Source: Thecamonas trahens ATCC 50062 (taxonomy: Eukaryota; Protista; Apusomonadida). From it: 64,000 nt of DNA. The stretch covers positions 434,001-498,000 of the forward strand of contig NW_013657669.1 of NCBI RefSeq assembly GCF_000142905.1, given 5' to 3'. The notes below the pieces were generated by a model. The model ran no database searches and was not told the origin of the DNA. It saw only the letters and a list, made by a program, of their open reading frames with translations. The position numbers and the translations under genes were made by a program. This document shows, in pieces, positions 5,234-33,182 of the stretch; the stretch's first letter is position 1, and each line of letters starts with the position of its first letter.

Positions 5234-6275
5234 TCAGCGAGTGTCGACGGTCGAAAACGGGTTGACCATGACGACCGGCTCGGCAAAGTCGTCGTCGTCG
5301 AGCGAGGAGAGTTCGAGCACAAACGGATTAGCAGACGAGTTCGAGACTGCAGTCGAGGTTCGCGAGATCGAGAGCGAGCTGAGCGGGCGACCAAGGTCGG
5401 CGTCGTCATCGTCAGAGGCGGCCCAAGGGTTGAGCAGGACATTGAGCTCTGTCTCAGTCGCACGCTCCTGTGGCGCGTCGGACTTGAGAATGTTGTCCGA
5501 GATCCAAAAAGTGATGATGTTGAGGAAGAGTGGGGCAACGAGCATGACGACAATGAGCTCGGTGTGTGGGTGGTTGAGAAAGGGCGTGAGGAAGAAGCGT
5601 GCGATGGCCTCGAGAATGCCTGCCACCGGATACATAAGCAGGCCCATGATGAGCTTGACAAGGACGACGATGACCTGCCAGACGCCGAGCTGCATGGCCC
5701 AGGCCTTGGCCGACGGCGGGCGGCCGTACTTGCCGGAGCGCAGGTACTCGTACGGCGAGAATTGGCCGACAATGTGTGCGTCGATGAAGAAGCGCTCAAA
5801 CGCGGTGAGAAAGGCCCAGCAGAGGGCAACACCAAGGGTGGCGTCGAGAAAGATGAGGATAAAGTAGCCGAGGCAGGCATCGTGCGAGGTGTAGAGCCAT
5901 GCGACAAAGACGTTGAGAAAGTGCCACGAGATCGAGGTGATGCCCTGCTTGCCTGTGTCAAACAGCCAGATCTGTGTCTCCACGGATGGACGAGTGAGTG
6001 CCACGAGTGCCACGAGTGCGATGGCGAGTGGTGCCTGCCACAATGGGTCTGTGCGTCGACGTGTGCATCTCCCTCCCTCCCATGGGCCTTGTCTGGTGCC
6101 ACGCGCGTCCTCTACCCCTCTCCCCGCATCCTCCCCCTCCCTTGTGCCATACCTTGGTGCTCCGTCGGTGCTCCTCCCGCCGCCACTTGACAAAGAGGGT
6201 GGCAAAAGCCACAGCCATGAGGGCAAGCTGGACCTCCTTGCCAAAGTCGTCCATCATCTGGCATCCCTCGCCCAT
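5234..6275 (-). CDS. STIMATE: STIMATE/TMEM110-family membrane protein (exons 6275-6153 and 5971-5234)
   Basis: Splicing intron 6152-5972 (GTATGG..CAG) gives AVAFATLFVKWRREEHRRSTK|IWLFDTGKQ..CLGYFILIFLDATLG..LRSGKYG..ELIVVMLVAPLFLNIITFWISDNILK, the family signature. Confidence 0.85.
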
Positions 6276-6286
6276 GCTGGAGGTGG

Positions 6287-6328
6287 TGGGGTGGGGGTGG
6301 GGGTGGGGGTGGGGGTGGGGGTGGGGTG
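6287..6328. repeat. (GGGGGT)n microsatellite upstream of STIMATE ATG
   Basis: About 7 direct copies of ggggtg/gggggt. Confidence 0.9.
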
Positions 6329-6452
6329 AGTGGGGTGTGACCTGCGCTGAGTGTGCAAAGTGCTCGCGCTCGCGCTAGCAATGTTTTGACTCGTTTGGCG
6401 CGAGCAGGTTATCGGCAAGGCTGGGCATGTGTGTATTCGCTCGCGAAAGGGG

Positions 6453-6484
<32 letters not shown>

Positions 6485-6512
6485 ACAGGGAAACGGCTGG
6501 GATCGACTGATG

Positions 6513-8457
6513 TCAAGCACTCGCACCGGCGGCCGCTGGCTCGCGGATGGCGTTGTTGCAGCGCCAGTCGCCGGAGCAGAGGTTGCAGTGAGAGACATTC
6601 GGCACACAGTCGGGACATGGTGGGCAGTCACAGTTGGCATCGCAGTATGTTGAGCACGATCGGCATGGCCATGGGCCGAGGCACGCCACGCAGCCCTCCC
6701 AGCCGCAACCGGGGCAGCCGCGCCCGGCTGTGCATACATGTCGAGATTGTGGATGTGAGTAGGGGCAAAGTGGGTGTGGGGAGTCGGAGGTGAGGGAGCA
6801 GAGGGGAAGCGGGGCAAAACGTACGATTGAGATGATGGCAGCGGTGGCCTCTGTAGTGGACCCAGCGCATGCCGCAGCCGGGCGAGGGACAAAGCTTGGA
6901 GGTCGATTCGATGTAGTCGCGGGTGGCGTCATCAGTGCCGTGGGCGGCGGCAGCCCACTCGGCGCAGGTCATGTCGGGATGGTCAACCGAGCAACCGTAG
7001 CACCAGCTCGCGTCGCAGTAGAGACACTCCATCCGGGTAGTCGGATCGGTCTCGCAGCCGTTGTCGAGGACCAAGAGGCCGCCACACGCCGGATTAATGC
7101 AGTACGTCCGCTGAGCGAGCGGGATGGCAGCGATGTCGTTGAAGCGAATAAACTTGTCGTACTCGTCGCGGGAGAGAGCCTCGCCGTGCGGTAGAACCCG
7201 AGTTGAGAGGCGAAGCAGGTTGTGGACCGATTCAGCGGCAACCACCGACGGGCACCGCGTCTCGCCATCAATGCATGGGCACTGCAGAGGGAACTGCTCA
7301 TTGACGTCGCCGAGGGCAACGCGGACGATGGCAATCGAGCAATTGACGCACATCAGGTGGCCGCACTCGCCAAGGCCGAGCAGCTCGCTTGCATCGTAGT
7401 CGACAAAGCAGACCGAGCACGTGAGCTCGGTGACAATGGCGGTCAGCTGCGCCGGCTCGCGGCAGTTGTTGCAGATCTCGCCATTGTCGTCGCGAAAGGT
7501 CCGGGCGCAAGTCATGCAAAGAAAGGCGTGTCCGCACGGGTAGTTGAGCGCGTTGGCCGGCGCGTCGAGGCAGAGGACACAGGTTGGGCGGGCTTTGCGG
7601 GCGGCAGCTGCCGCTACAGCGGCAGCAGCACGAGCGGCATCGGCGGGAGACGCCGCCGCGGCATCGTCGGCAAACGACGGTCCGACCATGGCAAACTCGA
7701 GCGAGAGTGCGCCCTGTGGTGCAACCGAGGCCTTGAACACGCCACCGCCGTCCGGCGGTGGGCCCAGCTCGCGGCGGAGGGCCCAGATCGGAAACTGACT
7801 GTCGAGCGCCATGGTGTGGGCGTAGACCTCGACGGCAGGAATAGCGATGTAGCCCATGAGCAGGTCAGTCCGTCCGCGCTCCCAGTCGTACATGTAGATC
7901 TCAACAAAGTCGTTGGGCGAGTTGATGGCAAAGTAGAAGGTTTCGTCCCACTCGGGCGTTTGTGAGTTCTTGCAAGTCGCAGTCTTTGCAAACACCTGCA
8001 GCCGGTCACGCTTGTCGAGACGAGCCGGATCAACAGCAGCAGTCGCCGGACTGCAGATACGAACGAGGCAATATGGATCGCCCTTACGAAAGGTGTCCAT
8101 CTTCCGCAGGCCCGATGCTGACACAATGCGCATGCCGATGTAGCGCGGGAGCGGGCGCGGATCGGCGTAGGTCGTCGATCGAGTCGAATGGCAGATGAAG
8201 AACGGCTTGCCATGGTCCGAATACCGCACCTCCCAGCCCTCGGGCAGCGGATCAGCTTCTGTGATGGGTCGCCGCTCCAGCGGATTGTCGTCGCGAGCGA
8301 GCGTCGTTCTCCGGAAGGCGATGAACTTGGAGAGCGAGTAGAGCTGTGGGAGGAGTGAGTGGCAGAGAAGGGAGGAGGGGAGGGGAGAGGGGAGGGAGAG
8401 AGGAGAGCGTACGTTTTCAAGACGGCCAAAGCTGGCCTGAGTCGGGTCGGCGGCCAT
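6513..8457 (-). CDS. WW + C2 + RING + RBR (RING1-IBR-RING2) E3 ubiquitin ligase with Cys-rich tail; introns 8412-8344 and 6824-6728
   Basis: WW LPEGWEVRYSDHGKPFFICHSTRSTTYADPR; C2 DPYCLV..PEWDETF..YDWE; RING CVLC..PCGHAFLCMTC; RING1 CSVC..CGHLMCVNC; IBR YCINPAC..CLYC..WCYGC..H. Splicing restores RING2 CPSPGC..GHRCHHLN|PGRGCPGC..CVAC. Confidence 0.85.
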
Positions 8458-8780
8458 GGCCGTGGCGGGTGTGTGGGGTGGGGTGCTGGAGGGTGGAACG
8501 GCTGGGTGCACCTGTGTCGGTTGTGGGAAGGGGGGGGGGGGGGGGGGGGCTGGCAATGGGCGGAGGGGTGCGCAAAGGGGATGGCGACGATGTGTGCGTG
8601 GATGTGACTGGATACTGTGGAAAAGGCTTTGGCTTGCTCTGCTGCTCTACTGTTCTGCGTGGTGGGGCGAATGAAGGTGGTGGCGCATGCGATCATCGAG
8701 CCCATGATCCAACCAGGAGCTGCTCGGCGCGCGTACAAGCGTCCACGCGCACACGCGCACACGCCACTCTCCTCGCCATC

Positions 8781-26262: not shown

Positions 26263-27033
26263 GCCCGAGAGAGCCGAGGGAGCCGAGGGAGCCGAGGGAG
26301 CCGACGACGGGCTGGGCTTCCCTCCCCCCCCCACCCCCACCCCCACCTACCCCCTGGTTGGTGGTAGAGGGGGGGGGGAGGGGGGGAAAGAGGTTCCGGT
26401 GGCACTGTTCGCCATGGCTGCCTTCTGCTGTTACCTCTGCTCTGTCCTCTTGCTCTCGCCGCTTGCCATGGCCGTCCCTGGTGGTGCGGTAAACTCGGGA
26501 TGAACACTCTGTCGAACACACTTGTTGGAGAGGGGAAGGTGAAGGGGGGATGGGGTGCGCATAGCGTATAGAGCGTGTGTACACAGGGGATACAGATGGG
26601 GATGGGGGGAGGAAGGGGAGGAGAGGACAGATCGGGATATGGTCAGTGGATGTAGACGTGGGATGTAGGTTGTGGGCGATGAGCATGGAGGGGGGGGGGG
26701 GGGGGGGGGAGGGGGGTTGCGCCCAGAGAGACAGGCAAGGCGTGGCTGGGACCTGATGATGTAGAGGCCACCGCTGGTGGTGCTGTAGCTAGCTATGGAC
26801 ATGGTAGTTATGGTAGTTCGAGTGATCAGCACCCCTCCGCACCAGTGTTGATGGATGTGATGGCTGCGATCTCGGCCATCGTCACGATCATGGCTACCTA
26901 CCATCTCCATACAATAGCCATCGCCATGACCATCACCCATCCCCACCACCATCGCCATCCCCACCCACACCACCCACACCCATCCCCACACCCACACACC
27001 CACACACACACCCCTCTCTCCCACACAACCACC

Positions 27034-28365
27034 ATGTCATCGACAAGAGGCAGGGAGAGGACGATCCGCCATGCGGCCGTGGTGGTCATGGGCGATGTGG
27101 GCCACTCGCCACGGATGCAGTATCACGCGTGCTCGCTAGCGCAGCTGCCGTCGTCGCCGAGAGTCTCGCTGGTCGGCTACGCCGAGAGCCCGCTGCCTGC
27201 CGCTGTAGCGGCGGTGACCGACACGGTGGCGCTGGGCGTCTTCCCGCGACTCCCACGGTGGCTCTTCCCGCTCTACGCCCCGTTCAAGGTGGTATACATG
27301 GCGTGGGTCCTCTTCTACGCCCTTGCCTTCCGCCTCGCCTCGCCCCCGGACATCCTCCTTGTCCAGAACCCGCCCTCGGTTCCTGTTCTCGCCGTCTGCT
27401 GGCTCTACACTGCCCTCATCGCCCGCTCCTGCCGCCTCGTCGTCGACTGGCACAACTTTGGCTACACTATCCTCGCCTACTCGCTGCCGCGCCCGCTGCG
27501 ATGGGTCGCCTCGCTCGCTGCGGCCTACGAGCGCTTCTTTGGCTCGCGCGCCTCGGCGCATCTCGCCGTCACCCGCGCCATGGCCGCATGGCTCGAGGCA
27601 AACTGGGGCATCGCGCCTGTTGTCCTGTACGACCGCCCGCCTAACCAGTTTGTCCGCCTCTCTCCTGACGAGCGCCTCGCCTTTATCGCCCGCCTCCCAG
27701 AGCTCATCGATGGCTTTGACCCGGCCGCCGCCGCCCTCCTCGCTCCCAACCGCCCGGCCTTTCTCGTCTCGTCCACCTCGTGGACACCCGACGAGGACTT
27801 TTCCATCCTCCTCGAGGCCATGGTCGCCTACAATGCGCTGGTGGAGGCCCAGAACCCAGACTCGGCCCGTGCTCTCCCGGATGTTGTCCTGGTCATCACC
27901 GGCCGTGGCCCGCTCAAGGCCCACTACGAAGCCGCCATCGCCGACCTCGGCCTCGCCCACGTCTCCATCTTCACCGCATTTCTCCCCATCGCCGACTACC
28001 CGCGCATCCTCGGCGCCGCAGATCTCGGCATATCTCTCCACACCAGCTCGTCCGGCCTCGACCTGCCCATCAAGATCATCGACGCCTTTGGCGCCGGCCT
28101 CCCCGTCGCCGCCGTCAACTTTCCCTGCCTCCACGAGCTCGTCGTCGACGGCTACAACGGCGTCGTCTTTGACTCGGCACCGGACCTCGCTGCCGCGCTC
28201 TCGGGCCTCTTTGCCGGCTTCCCGCGCTCGACCAAGGCGCTGGAGAACCTCGCCGACGGCGCCGCTGCCTTTCAGTCGCTGCGGTGGGACGAGAACTGGA
28301 ACACGGTTGCCCGCCCGCTGATGGTCGGCAACGACGCCCCGGTCGTGTATCGCAAGCGCGAGTAG
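27034..28365 (+). CDS. ALG1: Chitobiosyldiphosphodolichol beta-1,4-mannosyltransferase
   Basis: VMGDVGHSPRMQYHA, LVQNPPSVP, DWHNFGY, SSTSWTPDEDF, ADLGISLHTSSSGLDLP. Confidence 0.96.
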   Translation: MSSTRGRERTIRHAAVVVMGDVGHSPRMQYHACSLAQLPSSPRVSLVGYAESPLPAAVAAVTDTVALGVFPRLPRWLFPLYAPFKVVYMAWVLFYALAFRLASPPDILLVQNPPSVPVLAVCWLYTALIARSCRLVVDWHNFGYTILAYSLPRPLRWVASLAAAYERFFGSRASAHLAVTRAMAAWLEANWGIAPVVLYDRPPNQFVRLSPDERLAFIARLPELIDGFDPAAAALLAPNRPAFLVSSTSWTPDEDFSILLEAMVAYNALVEAQNPDSARALPDVVLVITGRGPLKAHYEAAIADLGLAHVSIFTAFLPIADYPRILGAADLGISLHTSSSGLDLPIKIIDAFGAGLPVAAVNFPCLHELVVDGYNGVVFDSAPDLAAALSGLFAGFPRSTKALENLADGAAAFQSLRWDENWNTVARPLMVGNDAPVVYRKRE

Positions 28366-28398
28366 TAGCTGCGCTCCCGCTGTGTTTAGGTTGTTGCT

Positions 28399-30485
28399 TT
28401 ACCGCTTGCGCGAGGCGTTGAGGGCGAGGTAGGAAAGGATGAGGAAGAGAGCCATGAAGACGCCGAGGATGCCCGAGTTGAAACCGATGTTTCCGTCCTC
28501 CTCGGCCTCGAACAGGTCAAGGACGGCCTGCCCGTTGGGAACAGGGCAGGTACCGTTGATGGCCTCGGAGGCGTCGCAGGTAAAGGTGAGGCCCTTGAGC
28601 TCGTTGATGAGCACGCCGTTAAAGGCGTACTTCATGAACGAAAAGTAGCGCAGCCAGCGGATGCCGACCCAGATCGACTCGGGCTTGACGAGGAACGAGG
28701 CAAAGAGGGTCGACGGGAGGACAATGCCCGGAGCAAGCGCGTTGGCGGCATCCGAATCGCCGGTCGCCGCAGAGAGGAGGAGACCGAGCCAAGTGCCAAA
28801 GAGCGAGAGCTGGTATGCAAAGCCGGTAAAGATAAGGAACTTGTCGAGCTCGGCCTGCAAGCCGACCATAAAGTAGACCTGGAAGACGTACAGGGCGATG
28901 TAGGCGGCCTGGAACGGCAGATCGGCGATGACCTTGGCGGCGAGGTACGTGACGGTGCTGTAGAGGCCGTCCTGTGACTCGCGCATGAACACCGCCCGCT
29001 CTGGGATGAACAGCGTCACTGCCGCATGCATACCAGAGAAGACAAGCATGATGGTGACGAGGAAGATGAGGCCGGCGCGGTCGAGACCACCAGTCTGTCC
29101 GCGGTCGATCTGGTACCAGATGGCAGCAATGAGGAAGCCGAGAATGATCATCTGTCCGGCGCGGGCCCAAGAGGCCTGCTTGTTGCGGACCTGGAGCATG
29201 ATGTTGCGCTTGACGAGCTGCGCGAGCTTGACGATCGGCGACGGGCGGTGGCCCTTAAACTCGTCGAGTTGGAGCGATCCAGCCTGCGAGAGCGAGGCCG
29301 ACGACGAGTCCGGGAGGCCCATGCCGGCTGCGCGCGCCGCGGCAGTGATGGCCTGGATGCGCGCGAGCGACGAGGAGGCCGAGGTAGACGCCGACGACGA
29401 GCCGCTGTGAGCCGTCTCGTCGTCGCCCGGCACCAGCGCCGTGCGTGAGAGGAGCTCGATGATAAAGTCAGCCGGGTTGAGTCCGCGCGGGCATTCGTAG
29501 CCGACGTCCCCAGGAAGGGGAGGAGGCCGGTGACCTTGCCCGAGTACGCGACCTGGCCGCCGGCAAGTGCCATGACGTTGTCGAAGATGTGCAGCATCTC
29601 GTTGGAGGCCTGCGAAATCGAGGCCAGGATGGTCATGTTGTTCTTCTTGGCGAGCTTGCGGAGGTTGACGATGACGGTCTCGGCAGTGGCGGCGTCGAGG
29701 CCTGCGGTGGGATCGTCGACGTACAGGATCTGCGGAGCGGTGATGAGCGACTGGGCAATGTTGGCCCGCTTCCGCTCGCCACCGGAGAGGCCGCGCTTGA
29801 GGCCCGGGACGCCGACGAGGGTGTCGCCGACCTTGGCGATGCCAAGGGAGTTGAGAACTGACTCGACGCGTGCGCCCCGATCCTCGGCCGACATGGTCGA
29901 CGGGAGCGAGAGACGGGCGAGGAAGTGCAGGTTCTCGCGTGGCGTCGAGTCGGAGAGCATGATGTCTTCCTGCTGGACATAGCCCGAGATGGCCATGACG
30001 TCCGACGGATCAAGCTCCATGCCGTTGTACAGCACCGAGCCGGACGACTCGAGCGCCGACGGAAGACGACCGGCGAGGACGTCGAGGAGGAGCGACTTGC
30101 CCGACGACGACGGGCCGAGGAGCATGGTGAGCTCGCCCGGAACAAGCTTCAGCGAGACATTGTCGAGGAGGACGATCTCATCCGTGCCAGGCCGGCCGCG
30201 GCACTTGTCAAGCAGCGACTTTTTGGCCGGGACCTTGACGGTGATGTTGGAGGCCTCGATGATGACACCGGCGGCACCGCCCGACTCGGCGTCGTAGCCG
30301 TAGCCGGCGGAGTCGGTCGATGAGGGTGAGCTTGATGACGACGACGAGGCCGATGAATCTGTTGACGAGACAGAGGTTGCGGTGTCGAGCGCAATGGCTC
30401 TGCTGGTGTAGCTTGACGACGACGTCGACGACTCTTGCTGCTCCATGACTACGCCGGCAGCGGACGGGGTGATACGAATGGGCAT
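28399..30485 (-). CDS. ABCG half-transporter A (NBD-TMD) with degenerate Walker B/H-loop; frameshift at 29508-29511
   Basis: Walker A GPSSSGKS, Q-loop YVQQED, signature LSGGERKR, YVDDPTAGLD, SISQ. Adding one G restores GYECPRGLNPADFII and joins the 6-TM ABC2 domain (ERAVFMRES..GLYS). Confidence 0.9.
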
Positions 30486-30965
30486 AGATTTGCCTGTCTA
30501 CAGCGCGATCGCACGAGAGAGGATGTTGCAACTACGTACAAGGCAAGCACGAGCGAGTGCGCTGTGTTTTATCGCGCGCGGCGTACGCGTCGTGGCAATC
30601 TGGCCGAAAATCGCCGGTGCGGCGGTCCGCTATTCGCCGACTTGGCCGCTCCTCACTCTTAGCCGTCTCTCTCACCATAGACTCTCTGCAAGACCGCATA
30701 CGCTGGTAAGTACGTACAAAGCAGTATGTGCTATCTAGGCGGGAGAAGATAATGCATGTAGGGTCATGCGTAGCACCTGTGGGGGCCGCCGACATATTTC
30801 GCCGAGTAGTGCCGCAAGCTCACTCCAATCAACTCAATGTGCACAACTTGAAACCGTCAAAACCTCAACTATGTGGAGCTGCAAGTCCCGCGCCGTGCGG
30901 GGCATACCGCAATCGCTTGTGTGTGACCGAGTACCCACAAGCCAAGACTCTTCTTTTTATACATC

Positions 30966-32909
30966 ATGTCCAACTCGGTACCGGAATCGTCATCGATGCC
31001 GACATCTTCGTCGGCATCCAACTTGACACCTTCCGACTCGTACACGTTTGTGACAGCTGGGCCGAGCGATGAGAGCGACGAGGAGATCGTGCTCGAGTTT
31101 AACAACATCAAGGTGTGGGTGGAGAACTTCAAGGCGACCAAGGCCGATGGCTCGACCGAGGTCATCAAGCGGCGCGACATTCTCCGCGGCGTGTCAGGCA
31201 AGGTCGAGTCGGGCCAGATGACGATGCTGATGGGGGCGAGTGGGGCGGGCAAGACCACGCTGTTCAACGTCCTTGCCGGGCGGGCGCACACGGTCGAGTC
31301 CTCGGGCTCGATCTTGGTCAATGGAAAGCACTTTGGCCTCGCCGAGTTCCAGGAGATCTCGGCGTACGTGACGCAGGACGCGACGTTCCTCAACTCGATG
31401 ACACCGGACGACATTCTGGGCTTCCGCGCCAACATGCTCCTTCCGTACTCGATGTCTGCCGAGGAAAAGCAGGCACGGGTTGACGACGTCATCGAGCTGC
31501 TCGGCCTGGAGGAGGTGCGCAACGTGCGGCTCGGCGAGCCGGGCGTCTCAGCGCGTGGCCTCAACTTTGTCCAGCGCAAGAAGCTCAACATCGCGGCAGC
31601 GCTGCTGGTCAAGCCGCGGATCCTGTTTGTGGACGAGCCGACGACCGGCCTGGACGCCGCGATGGCCAAGTCGGTCATGCTCTCGCTGCAGCGGGTGGCC
31701 AACTCGCGGAAGCTCGTCGTCTTCTGCACCATTCATCAGCCGTCGGTCTTTGTGTACAACCTCTTTGACCAGGCGCTCATCATGGCGCTGGGACAGATTG
31801 CGTACTCGGGCTCGGTCGACAACATTGTGCCCCACCTCGACAAGCTCGGCTACGAGTGCGACGAGTTCAAGAACCCAGCGGACCACGTGATCCAGGTGCT
31901 CGACTCGCGTGACGGCGACGAGAAGCGGGTTCAGAAGCTTATCGATGCATACCACGCCGACGCCTCGTCGTCGTCGTCGTATGCCGGGCCCAGCGAAGTT
32001 GTTGCCGAGATCAACGACGACGGTGCGCCGATGACGCTTCCGTGGTACGGGCGGATGTATCAGCTGACGAAGCGTGCGCTCAAGGTGACGCTGTACAACG
32101 ACAAGGCGCTCAAGGCGTCTGTGGGCCAGGCCATTGTCTTTGGCATCCTCATCGGCATCATCTACTCGCTCGACAACTCACAGGCCGGCGCGACTGATCG
32201 CGTCGGGCTGCTCTTCCTCACCACGACCAACGCAATCTTCCTCTCGCTGCAGGGCTCGGTCTTTGTGCTCATCGCCGAGCGTGCGGTCTTCCTCCGCGAG
32301 GTGGCTGACGGCATCTACTCGATGCCTGCCTACCTGGTGAGCAAGGTGGCGTCGGATCTTCCGTTCCAGGTCCTGTACCAGTTCCTCTTCTCGGTCATCG
32401 TCTACTTTACCACCGGCCTGCAGCAGTCGCTCGGTCGGTTCCTCATCTTTGTTCTTGTCCAGTCGCTCGTGGCACTCGTCGGCTCGAACCTCGGCCTCGT
32501 CCTTTCGGCCTTTACCGGCGACGCGGCGACGTCGACCGCGCTCGCGCCGGTCATCATCGTTCCGTCGATGATGACGGCCGGTGTGCTCATCTCGACTGAG
32601 GCCATCCCGGTCTTCCTCCGCTGGCTCAAGCACGTCTCGATCCTCCGCTACGCCTTTACCGCCCTCCTCCTCAACGAGGCCGAGGACGCGCTCGTCTTCC
32701 ATTGCACGCCCGAGCTGCAGCTGCCCAACGGCCTCTGCCCCATCAACACTGGCAACGAGCTCATCGCCCAGCGCAATGCCAACCAGGAGCCGACCGGCAT
32801 CTGGTCGCGGGTCTTTATCCTCGTCGGCTATTACGTCTTTACCGTCGTTGTTGCCTACCTCGGCCTCCTCTTCTCTGTCCGCAACCAGCGGAAGACCAAG
32901 CGGTCCTGA
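30966..32909 (+). CDS. ABCG half-transporter B (NBD-TMD) with degenerate signature motif
   Basis: GASGAGKTT, YVTQD, signature LNFVQRKK, FVDEPTTGLD, TIHQPS, NPADH, ERAVFLRE, 6 TM. Confidence 0.93.
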   Translation: MSNSVPESSSMPTSSSASNLTPSDSYTFVTAGPSDESDEEIVLEFNNIKVWVENFKATKADGSTEVIKRRDILRGVSGKVESGQMTMLMGASGAGKTTLFNVLAGRAHTVESSGSILVNGKHFGLAEFQEISAYVTQDATFLNSMTPDDILGFRANMLLPYSMSAEEKQARVDDVIELLGLEEVRNVRLGEPGVSARGLNFVQRKKLNIAAALLVKPRILFVDEPTTGLDAAMAKSVMLSLQRVANSRKLVVFCTIHQPSVFVYNLFDQALIMALGQIAYSGSVDNIVPHLDKLGYECDEFKNPADHVIQVLDSRDGDEKRVQKLIDAYHADASSSSSYAGPSEVVAEINDDGAPMTLPWYGRMYQLTKRALKVTLYNDKALKASVGQAIVFGILIGIIYSLDNSQAGATDRVGLLFLTTTNAIFLSLQGSVFVLIAERAVFLREVADGIYSMPAYLVSKVASDLPFQVLYQFLFSVIVYFTTGLQQSLGRFLIFVLVQSLVALVGSNLGLVLSAFTGDAATSTALAPVIIVPSMMTAGVLISTEAIPVFLRWLKHVSILRYAFTALLLNEAEDALVFHCTPELQLPNGLCPINTGNELIAQRNANQEPTGIWSRVFILVGYYVFTVVVAYLGLLFSVRNQRKTKRS

Positions 32910-33182
32910 GCGCTGCCCATCGGTACGGTTGTTGGGGCGCGTTGTTGCGCGCCGGAGTGCACTTCAAAAATGAATCACATCGCAGCACGGGCGGGAGGCT
33001 GTACACGAGCGCCACGCTCGCTAGGGTGGGAGAGCTCAGTTGCGGCGACATATGACTGCAGTGGGGCCTGGTGGTTGCTGCAGTGGGGCTTCACTGCTGG
33101 TCTTTGGTTTGACGACAACCAGAACTGCCGAGCCGCCGCACGAGTAATGTGATCTTCGGTTTTTCATTTTCGATCTAAAGGG

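What the first reader, a model, noticed from the sequence alone, without database searches (positions are those of the whole stretch)
28399..32909. Head-to-head ABCG pair with complementary dead motifs: an ABCG5/G8-style asymmetric heterodimer
Seen: two ABCG half-transporters diverge across 480 bp (30486-30965). Gene A keeps the signature LSGGE but has the catalytic Glu as Asp (DDPT), the switch His as Ser (SISQ) and an altered Walker A (GPSSSGKS). Gene B keeps Walker A GASGAGKT, DEPT and TIHQ but has signature LNFVQ (31560-31574). Established: each ABC ATP site uses Walker A/B and H-loop of one subunit plus the signature of the other. Vertebrate ABCG5/ABCG8 are head-to-head on a short bidirectional promoter and have one active and one degenerate site. 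Inference: either homodimer would be crippled, while A+B gives one intact and one dead site. This suggests an obligate, co-regulated heterodimer, possibly a sterol/lipid exporter, that is either anciently related to or convergent with G5/G8.
Basis: partly seen in the sequence, partly recalled or inferred. Interest (0 to 1): 0.85.

Follow-up and report, generated by a model that had tools for sequence, protein, structure and literature searches.

The report
Divergent asymmetric ABCG half-transporter gene pair
In the protist Thecamonas trahens, two neighbouring back-to-back genes encode half ABC transporters whose ATP-site defects complement each other, so they most likely work only as a pair with one working ATP site, an arrangement that arose independently of the human sterol pump ABCG5/ABCG8.

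Summary
The genome is Thecamonas trahens ATCC 50062.

**The two genes**
- Gene A (minus strand, 28399-30485) keeps the signature LSGGE. It has Asp for the catalytic Glu (DDPT) and Ser for the H-loop His (SISQ).
- Gene B (plus strand, 30966-32909) keeps Walker A, DEPT and IHQ. Its signature is LNFVQ.
- Their start codons lie 480 bp apart, head-to-head.

**The frameshift in A is an assembly error.** Contigs from the organism's own reads and from an unrelated 2025 estuary metagenome both carry one extra base at 29509. This gives LPFL-E-DVGYECP and an intact 695-aa protein.

**Conservation**
- The same head-to-head pair with the same split of defects occurs at three loci in this genome (C11, C66, C31).
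- It also occurs on four kinds of marine metagenome contigs.
- The catalytic position in A-type proteins is D, N, S or G, never E. The H-loop position is S or A, never H. Every B-type protein has a degenerate signature.

**Ancestry**
- The A and B clades are each monophyletic, are sisters (support 99), and have mirrored subtrees.
- Both score higher against ABCG1 and ABCG2 than against G5 and G8. An AU test rejects kinship with PDR halves.
- The pair is therefore most likely an obligate asymmetric heterodimer, convergent with G5/G8.
- No tree containing G5/G8 could be built.

The substrate is unknown; a sterol role is unsupported.

The parts
28399..30485 (-). Gene A: A-type half-size ABCG (NBD then TMD). 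It is 695 aa once the missing base at 29509/29510 is restored by reads. The public model P0121 is 655 aa.
   Evidence: ORFs; Pfam ABC_tran and ABC2_membrane; P0121 is named T. trahens ABCG2 on a 571036-bp contig; reads.
29508..29511 (-). Apparent frameshift, which is an assembly error. The reads carry one extra base (T on the + strand, behind 29509). The coding strand then reads ctg gAg gac = L-E-D.
   Evidence: Searches show the frames. table 4 shows the insertion in X1 contig 29060-30179 (0 other letters) and in X2 contig 29480-29843 (depth 11.6). The C66 paralogue reads LPFLEDIGYECP.
30093..30116 (-). A Walker A, GPSSSGKS. The lysine is kept, so ATP binding is probably retained.
29775..29789 (-). 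A signature LSGGE, canonical and invariant in all A-type relatives.
29706..29729 (-). A Walker B, ILYVDDPT. The catalytic Glu is replaced by Asp. Relatives have D, N, S or G here, never E.
29610..29624 (-). A H-loop, ASISQ. The switch His is replaced by Ser. Relatives have S or A here, never H.
28597..29223 (-). A transmembrane domain (ABC2_membrane).
   Evidence: residues 96-304 of the TMD piece, E 1e-44.
30486..30965 (.). Shared 480-bp divergent intergenic region, a presumed bidirectional promoter. GC is 55% against about 64% in the surroundings. It has no sequence similarity to the intergenic regions of the other two pairs.
   Evidence: X2 contig 30421-31492 spans it together with both gene starts.
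30966..32909 (+). Gene B: B-type half-size ABCG, 647 aa, intact.
   Evidence: P0001 is 100% identical.
31233..31256 (+). B Walker A, GASGAGKT, canonical.
31560..31574 (+). B signature position, LNFVQ, degenerate. All B-type relatives are degenerate here (LNFVD, LTFAQ, LNTAA, LSTTQ, LSLAQ, LNVAT).
31620..31643 (+). B Walker B, ILFVDEPT, with the catalytic Glu present.
31728..31739 (+). B H-loop, TIHQ, with the His present.
32058..32678 (+). B transmembrane domain (ABC2_membrane).
   Evidence: residues 365-571, E 2e-43.

Best explanation
Genes A and B encode the two halves of an obligate heterodimeric half-size ABCG (type II) exporter of Thecamonas trahens. They are transcribed divergently from a shared intergenic region of about 480 bp.

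In the dimer, one ATP site is built from B's Walker A, Walker B Glu, Q-loop and H-loop His together with A's LSGGE signature. That site is fully consensus and hydrolyses ATP.

The other site is built from A's Walker A (Lys kept), its Walker B with Asp in place of Glu, and its H-loop with Ser in place of His, together with B's LNFVQ. That site probably still binds ATP but hydrolyses it poorly or not at all. It would act as a structural or regulatory site.

An A-A dimer would lack both catalytic residues at both sites. A B-B dimer would lack the signature at both sites.

The pair arose by duplication of a canonical half-size ABCG in the apusomonad lineage. The two copies then lost complementary motifs. 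The pair was later copied as a two-gene unit. It is convergent with ABCG5/G8 and with PDR-type full-size ABCGs, not orthologous to them.

Shown here: the sequence features, the intact frames, the conservation, the gene arrangement and the phylogeny. Inferred: physical heterodimerisation, asymmetry of hydrolysis, shared promoter use and export direction. The substrate is unknown.
For: 1. Motifs are confirmed at the stated coordinates.
2. Gene A is intact. Two independent read sets insert one base at 29509. The intact C66 paralogue reads LPFLED. dN/dS between A and A' is 0.26.
3. Seven head-to-head A/B loci were found: C11, C66 and C31 in this genome and metagenome contigs L020, L021-23, L024 and L032/33, with 250-680 bp between the genes.
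4. Every A-type protein keeps LSGGER and the Walker-A Lys but lacks the Walker-B Glu (D/N/S/G) and the H-loop His (S/A). Every B-type protein keeps Walker A, DE and IHQ but has a degenerate signature. This holds down to 36-45% identity.
5. In the trees, the A clade has support 100, the B clade 100 and A+B as sisters 99. The nearest outgroup is canonical: the T. trahens C10 gene plus P0176. The A and B subtrees are congruent.
6. RNA-library contigs of run X14 match both genes of the C66 pair.
7. [quoted passage not shown]
Against: - There is no biochemical or structural evidence that A and B bind each other.
- With three A genes and three B genes in one genome, cross-pairing between loci is possible.
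- No RNA contig specific to the C11 copy was seen in the two RNA runs laid. The RNA evidence concerns the C66 copy, and Logan contigs cannot show expression level.
- One A-type protein (P0134) and one B-type protein (P0010) sit on contigs whose called neighbours do not show a divergent partner. No DNA was available to check.
- ABCG5 and ABCG8 sequences could not be placed in the tree, so convergence rests on bit scores and tree shape.
Confidence: 0.75

Rival explanations
1. Gene A is a decaying pseudogene, and B works alone or with another partner.
For: The assembly shows a one-base frame break at 29508-29511. The public gene model, 655 aa, had to skip it.
Against: Contigs from the organism's own reads (X1: 0 mismatches, 1 gap) and from an unrelated estuary metagenome (X2: depth 11.6) both carry the missing base. 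dN/dS against the C66 copy is 0.26. The A-type clade is conserved with an invariant signature in at least six 50%-identity clusters.
Confidence: 0.02
2. The pair is an ancient orthologue of ABCG5/ABCG8 (A matching G8, B matching G5), inherited from the common ancestor of apusomonads and opisthokonts.
For: The arrangement is head-to-head with a short spacer (480 bp here, 374 bp in human; PMC6824678). The logic is the same: B, like G5, has the degenerate signature, and A, like G8, has the degenerate ATPase side. Apusomonads are close relatives of opisthokonts. A' scores slightly higher with G8 than with G5 (223 vs 216 bits), and B slightly higher with G5 than with G8 (187 vs 183 bits).
Against: Both proteins score much higher with ABCG1 and ABCG2 (246-272 bits) than with G5 and G8. 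A' against B scores 380 bits. A and B are sister clades nested among canonical half-size ABCGs. The defects differ: G8 has lost the Walker-A Lys, whereas A keeps it and has lost the Walker-B Glu and H-loop His (PMC6824678, PMC7756269).
Confidence: 0.08
3. The pair is the unfused or split counterpart of PDR-type full-size ABCGs (A corresponding to the N-half, B to the C-half).
For: Many full-size hits show the same split. Their N-half has an intact signature but a lost H-loop His and sometimes DSPT or DQPT. Their C-half has a degenerate signature such as LSLSQRKR or ISVEQRKR. P0142 (A-type) has GPPDVGKT and ILLCDSPTDGLD, which resemble the N-halves of P0182 and P0171.
Against: In both trees the N- and C-halves of these proteins form their own clade, far from A+B. 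The AU test rejects A plus N-halves as one clade (delta lnL 127.7, p 3e-22). No PDR_CDR domain was found in this genome, although the search's controls also found nothing, so that negative is weak.
Confidence: 0.03
4. A and B do not pair with each other. A is a non-catalytic regulatory or receptor-like ABCG homodimer, and B pairs with a canonical ABCG that supplies a good signature.
For: Half-size ABCGs can use several partners, as insect White does with Scarlet or Brown (my own knowledge). T. trahens has several canonical half-size ABCGs.
Against: This would not explain why adjacency, divergent orientation and complementary defects are kept together in seven loci, nor why the A and B subtrees mirror each other.
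Confidence: 0.1

Closest known systems
Human ABCG5/ABCG8 sterol exporter
   Same: Two half-size ABCG genes lie head-to-head with a short spacer. The product is an obligate heterodimer with one consensus and one degenerate ATP site. The subunit with the degenerate signature (G5, B) carries the working Walker motifs (PMC6824678).
   Different: Not orthologous by the evidence here. A and B are sisters, and both lie closer to ABCG1 and ABCG2. G8's defect is Walker-A Lys to Arg, whereas A keeps the Lys and has lost the Walker-B Glu and H-loop His. No evidence bears on sterols.
Fungal and protist PDR-type full-size ABCG (Pdr5, Cdr1)
   Same: The distribution of defects is the same. The first NBD has deviant catalytic motifs (the H-loop His is replaced) with a good signature. 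The second NBD has good catalytic motifs with a degenerate signature (PMC8124828).
   Different: PDRs are single chains of 1200-1500 aa, whereas this is two separate genes. Phylogeny and the AU test separate them.
TAP1/TAP2 (ABCB2/B3) and bacterial heterodimers such as TM287/288
   Same: The degenerate-site pattern is the same type: Walker-B Glu to Asp plus a changed H-loop in one subunit, and a changed signature in the other (PMC7756269).
   Different: Those are type I (ABCB-like) exporters with TMD-NBD order and an unrelated membrane fold. This pair has the ABCG NBD-TMD order and the ABC2_membrane fold.
Canonical half-size ABCG homodimers (ABCG2, ABCG1; T. trahens C10 gene)
   Same: These are the closest solved relatives by sequence, at 246-272 bits over the full length. 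The domain order and fold family are the same.
   Different: Those have all motifs intact and form homodimers with two equivalent sites.

Membership tests
ABCG subfamily, half-size (NBD-TMD) | N-terminal ABC_tran NBD followed by a C-terminal ABC2_membrane TMD in a protein of about 600-700 aa | tested here: met
   PF00005 then PF01061 in both genes; full-length matches to ABCG1 and ABCG2, E 1e-78 to 1e-80.
Asymmetric ABC heterodimer (one consensus, one degenerate ATP site) | Deviations in the Walker B, H-loop or Walker A of one subunit and in the signature of the other, so that all defects fall in one composite site | tested here: met
   A has DDPT, SISQ and an intact LSGGE. B has LNFVQ and an intact GASGAGKT, DEPT and IHQ. 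The pattern is conserved in seven pairs.
Asymmetric ABC heterodimer (one consensus, one degenerate ATP site) | The two subunits physically associate and only one site hydrolyses ATP | not testable with these tools
   Needs co-purification and ATPase assays. Complex prediction was not run because it cannot separate AB from AA or BB.
ABCG5/ABCG8 family (orthology) | Head-to-head gene pair with a short shared spacer | tested here: met
   480 bp here, 374 bp in human (PMC6824678).
ABCG5/ABCG8 family (orthology) | G8-type Walker A (Lys replaced, GSSGCGRAS) paired with a G5-type signature (ISTGE) | tested here: not met
   All A-type proteins keep the Walker-A Lys. The defect lies in Walker B and the H-loop instead.
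ABCG5/ABCG8 family (orthology) | Closest sequence kinship to G5 or G8 rather than to other ABCGs | tested here: not met
   G5 and G8 score 183-223 bits against 246-272 bits for ABCG1 and ABCG2. A' against B scores 380 bits. No tree containing G5/G8 could be built.
ABCG5/ABCG8 family (orthology) | Sterol export | not testable with these tools
   No substrate evidence.
PDR-type full-size ABCG | Two NBD-TMD halves in one polypeptide | tested here: not met
   Two separate genes on opposite strands.
PDR-type full-size ABCG | A groups with N-halves and B with C-halves in a phylogeny | tested here: not met
   AU test p 3e-22.

The most novel reading that the evidence does not exclude
Apusomonads carry a previously undescribed clade of paired half-size ABCG genes. 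In this clade a head-to-head asymmetric heterodimer evolved independently of ABCG5/G8 and of PDR transporters. The pair was then propagated as a two-gene cassette: an old duplication gave the C31 pair, and a copy on C66 has its coding regions kept alike, perhaps by gene conversion. This would be a third, independent origin of a single-active-site architecture within ABCG. It would also be a natural system for asking why a degenerate site is repeatedly selected.
Probability: 0.7. Interest if true: 0.5.

Novelty: new member of a known kind. Interest (0 to 1): 0.5.

Why it matters
Asymmetric ATP sites are common in ABC transporters, but why they are favoured is unsettled.

Among half-size ABCGs, the textbook case of a divergently transcribed obligate asymmetric heterodimer is ABCG5/G8. 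This pair is an independent case from a free-living protist close to the root of animals and fungi. It has the same gene arrangement but a different chemical route to the dead site (Walker-B Glu and H-loop His rather than Walker-A Lys).

That suggests the architecture is a recurrent evolutionary solution rather than a one-off. It also offers several natural variants (D, N, S or G at the catalytic position) for comparative biochemistry.

On the practical side, it corrects a public gene model that was broken by a one-base assembly error.

Tried and rejected
**Pseudogene reading of A.** Rejected by reads, by the intact paralogue and by dN/dS.

**C66 copy as a haplotig of C11.** Rejected. Similarity is confined to the two coding regions. 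The flanks and the spacer are unrelated.

**PDR-half kinship.** I raised this myself. Both trees and the AU test reject it.

**Getting ABCG5/G8 sequences as tool ids for a joint tree.** This failed.
- None appeared among the listed hits.
- T. trahens paralogues C56 and C52 were checked as possible G5/G8-like baits, but their best solved relatives are ABCG2.
- PDB bit scores were used as a proxy instead.

**First homologue search with full-length A'.** It was swamped by its serine-rich N-terminus and gave only 13 hits. The exhaustive search without that segment worked.

**PMSF mixture tree on all 93 rows.** It did not finish. I used LG+G4 on 93 rows and the mixture model on 42 rows.

**Shared promoter motifs.** None were found among the three T. 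trahens spacers. No k-mer of 8 or more is shared by all three.

**Literature.** No paper in the library treats Thecamonas or apusomonad ABCGs.

**Earlier scan notes.** Nothing was relevant.

- The two pieces were searched apart.
- The intact C66 copy served as proxy.
- In the tree script the pieces were joined with X at the break.
Full report
**Where this is.** The window is contig C11, 434001-498000, of a 28.7-Mb assembly.
- The public model of gene A (P0121) is named 'ATP-binding cassette sub-family G member 2 [Thecamonas trahens ATCC 50062]' and lies on a contig of 571036 bp.
- A paralogue, P0005, carries the same organism name. It lies on a contig of 395032 bp, which is exactly the length of C31.
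- The genome is therefore the apusomonad Thecamonas trahens. It has about 64% GC, and these genes have no introns.

**The observation.**
- Gene B is one ORF, 30966-32909 (+), 647 aa. Gene A lies on the minus strand as two ORFs that overlap in different frames.
- Pfam finds ABC_tran followed by ABC2_membrane in both, which is the reverse (NBD-TMD) order of ABCG half-transporters.
- A and B are paralogues, 39% identical over the NBD and 34% over the TMD.
B has GASGAGKT, LNFVQ at 31560-31574, ILFVDEPT and TIHQ. A has GPSSSGKS, LSGGE, ILYVDDPT and ASISQ.
- The start codons are 480 bp apart.
It still fits GxxxxGK[ST], and most relatives have GPSGSGK[ST].

**The frameshift.** Translating the three frames shows that the NBD frame ends with ...GKVTGLLPFL and the TMD frame starts with DVGYECPRGLNPADF... 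They are offset by one base in a run of four G at 29508-29511 on the coding strand.

Logan contigs of four public runs were laid on 28200-33100.
- Contig 29060-30179 of X1 comes from the same organism (DNA, 2010). It has 0 other letters and 1 gap.
- Contig 29480-29843 of X2 comes from an unrelated 2025 estuary metagenome, at depth 11.6.
- Both carry an extra T behind + strand 29509. On the coding strand this gives ctg gAg gac, that is L-E-D.

Further points:
- The X1 contig is unambiguously the C11 copy. It has 0 mismatches over a span in which C11 and C66 differ at 52 places.
- The X2 contig carries only 2 of the 10 C66-type letters in its span.
- The intact paralogue on C66 reads LPFLEDIGYECP at this place.
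- Gene A is therefore intact at 695 aa, and the break is an assembly error.
- dN/dS between A and the C66 copy is 0.26 (dS 0.15).

**More copies in the same genome.** A six-frame search of the genome with B, followed by translation, found two further head-to-head pairs.
- On C66, A' has an uninterrupted frame of 702 aa and B' has 652 aa. The spacer is 496 bp. The motifs are the same as in A and B.
- On C31, B2 (= P0005) has GASGAGKT, LTFAQ, VDEPT and TIHQ. A2 has GPAGSGKT, LSGGE, LLVDNPT and VALSQ. The spacer is about 380-480 bp, depending on which start codon is used.
- A canonical half-size ABCG with every motif intact lies alone on C10.

C66 is not a haplotig of C11. Similarity is limited to the two coding regions (93.1% nt for A, 98.4% for B). 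It stops at the stop codons and within the first codons. The flanks and the spacer are unrelated.

**Copies elsewhere.**
- The B-type relatives P0002-P0008 and P0010 are 36-95% identical to B. All have a degenerate signature and all keep Walker A, DEP and IHQP. The outgroups have VSGGE or ISGGE.
- An exhaustive HMMER search with A', without its serine-rich N-terminus, found A-type relatives P0122, P0123, P0134, P0142 and P0152. All keep LSGGER and the Walker-A Lys.
- In those A-type relatives the catalytic position is D, D, D, S and G respectively. The H-loop position is S or A.

Fetching their contigs showed head-to-head pairs in four further lineages, mostly from Tara Oceans marine metagenomes.

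| Contig | A-type | B-type | Spacer |
|---|---|---|---|
| L020 | P0122 | B-type gene | 676 bp |
| L021-L023 | P0142/P0279 | P0008 | 511 bp |
| L024 | P0123 | partial P0003-like gene | 250 bp |
| L032/L033 | P0152 | P0007-like gene | 518 bp |

Every locus for which DNA could be read shows the divergent arrangement and the same split of defects, seven in all. Two contigs without DNA (P0134, P0010) have called neighbours that do not obviously fit. None of the environmental proteins carries a name.

**Phylogeny.** I built trees of half-domains from several groups:
- the A and B clades;
- other T. trahens ABCGs;
- named half-size ABCGs (White, Scarlet, ABCG1/4, ABCG2-like);
- unnamed canonical half-size hits;
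- the N- and C-halves of 24 full-size hits.

Two models gave the same result: LG+G4 on 93 rows, and LG+C20+F+G4 by PMSF, quick search, on 42 rows.
- The A clade has SH-aLRT support 100, the B clade 100, and A+B as sisters 99.
- The nearest outgroup is canonical: the T. trahens C10 gene plus P0176, at 96-97.
- The A and B subtrees mirror each other: {C11, C66, L020, L024}, {C31, L021} and {L032}.

The A/B duplication and its complementary decay therefore predate these lineages. The pair was later duplicated as a unit, since T. trahens carries two of the sub-clades.

**The PDR lead.** Many full-size hits show the same division of defects between halves. Their N-half has a good signature but no H-loop His, and sometimes DSPT. 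Their C-half has a degenerate signature such as LSLSQRKR or ISVEQRKR. I wrote this down as a hypothesis before building the tree.
- The trees place those N- and C-halves as sisters of each other, far from A+B.
- An AU test rejects A plus N-halves as one clade (delta lnL 127.7, p 3e-22).
- The resemblance is therefore convergent.

**Relation to ABCG5/G8.** The established facts come from two reviews.
- The human genes lie head-to-head, 374 bp apart. G8 has a degenerate Walker A (GSSGCGRAS) and G5 a degenerate signature (ISTGE). Only the site with G5's Walker motifs and G8's signature is needed for transport (PMC6824678).
- The review of degenerate sites notes that the G5/G8 pattern (signature plus Walker-A Lys) differs from the commoner pattern. 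The commoner pattern is Walker-B Glu, often to Asp, together with an H-loop change, as in TAP1/TAP2 (PMC7756269). The pair here has the commoner pattern.

| Query | ABCG1 | ABCG2 | CDR1 | G5 | G8 |
|---|---|---|---|---|---|
| B | 267 | 264 | 246 | 187 | 183 |
| A' | 246 | 272 | 257 | 216 | 223 |

All values are bits against solved structures. A' against B scores 380 bits. I could not obtain G5 or G8 sequences as tool ids, so no joint tree was made. The convergence verdict rests on these scores and on the nesting of A+B among canonical genes. I put ancient orthology at under 10%.

**Expression.**
- Contigs of the RNA library X14 match the C66 copies of both genes. The 386-nt contig on the A NBD shows 10 differences from C11 in a span where C11 and C66 differ at 10 places. 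The B contig shows 7 of 7.
- A metatranscriptome contig (X10) covers nearly all of a B'-like coding region.
- No contig specific to the C11 copy was seen in the two RNA runs.
- Logan contigs show presence only, not level or strand.

**Mechanism.** By the established composite-site rule (PMC7756269):
- A+B gives one all-consensus site: B's Walker A, Walker B, Q-loop and H-loop with A's LSGGE.
- A+B also gives one site that collects every defect: A's D-for-E and S-for-H with B's LNFVQ.
- Because A keeps its Walker-A Lys in all relatives, the degenerate site probably still binds ATP.
- A-A would lack the catalytic residues at both sites, and B-B the signature at both.

Heterodimerisation, one-site hydrolysis and shared promoter use are inferences. 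The substrate is unknown and nothing here points to sterols.

**Verdict.** It is a new, independently evolved member of a known kind (asymmetric ABC heterodimers), not a relative of G5/G8. No paper in the searchable library deals with it.

Noticed in passing
window 28398-30469 and 31032-32909 versus G000:C66:136968-141532 (L014): The two-gene cassette is duplicated on another contig. Similarity stops exactly at the ends of the coding regions (A 93% nt with dS 0.15; B 98% nt with dS 0.046). The 480/496-bp spacers and the flanks are unalignable. This suggests an old duplication whose coding regions are homogenised by gene conversion, B more recently than A.
   Followed up: partly
window 29509/29510: The public assembly lacks one base here. 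The public protein model of gene A (P0121, 655 aa) is therefore wrong around this place; the true product is 695 aa.
   Followed up: yes
window 26845-28365 (+): An ORF of 506 aa with GT4/GT1 glycosyltransferase domains (ALG1-like by my reading) lies just downstream of gene A. It is not part of the duplicated cassette.
   Followed up: no
G000:C20:276085-277749 (L012): Another T. trahens half-size ABCG has a slightly deviant signature (LSSGE) and H-loop (TLHAPS). It sits on a very long branch in the tree (1.5) and may be another non-canonical ABCG.
   Followed up: no
proteins P0171, P0181, P0182 (full-size hits): These unnamed full-size ABCGs have strongly degenerate N-half motifs: Walker A GGPDAGQS or GAPDSGAT without the Lys, and Walker B DSPT or DQPT. 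Their C-half signatures read IAPHLRKK, VSPEVRKK and LPPHLRKK. This is a more extreme asymmetry than in the other PDR-like hits.
   Followed up: partly
L027 2626-4089 (-): Downstream of the environmental B-type gene P0007 lies a partial gene. Its product starts with a Zn2Cys6-like cysteine pattern (CDNNIPCQRCSRRGIAC), a hint about the kind of organism these contigs come from.
   Followed up: no
L015 (G000:C10:76000-85999), upstream part of ORF 5931-8660 (-): A run of N (read as X in translation) sits in the open frame upstream of the canonical C10 ABCG gene. It is a scaffold gap or a masked stretch.
   Followed up: no
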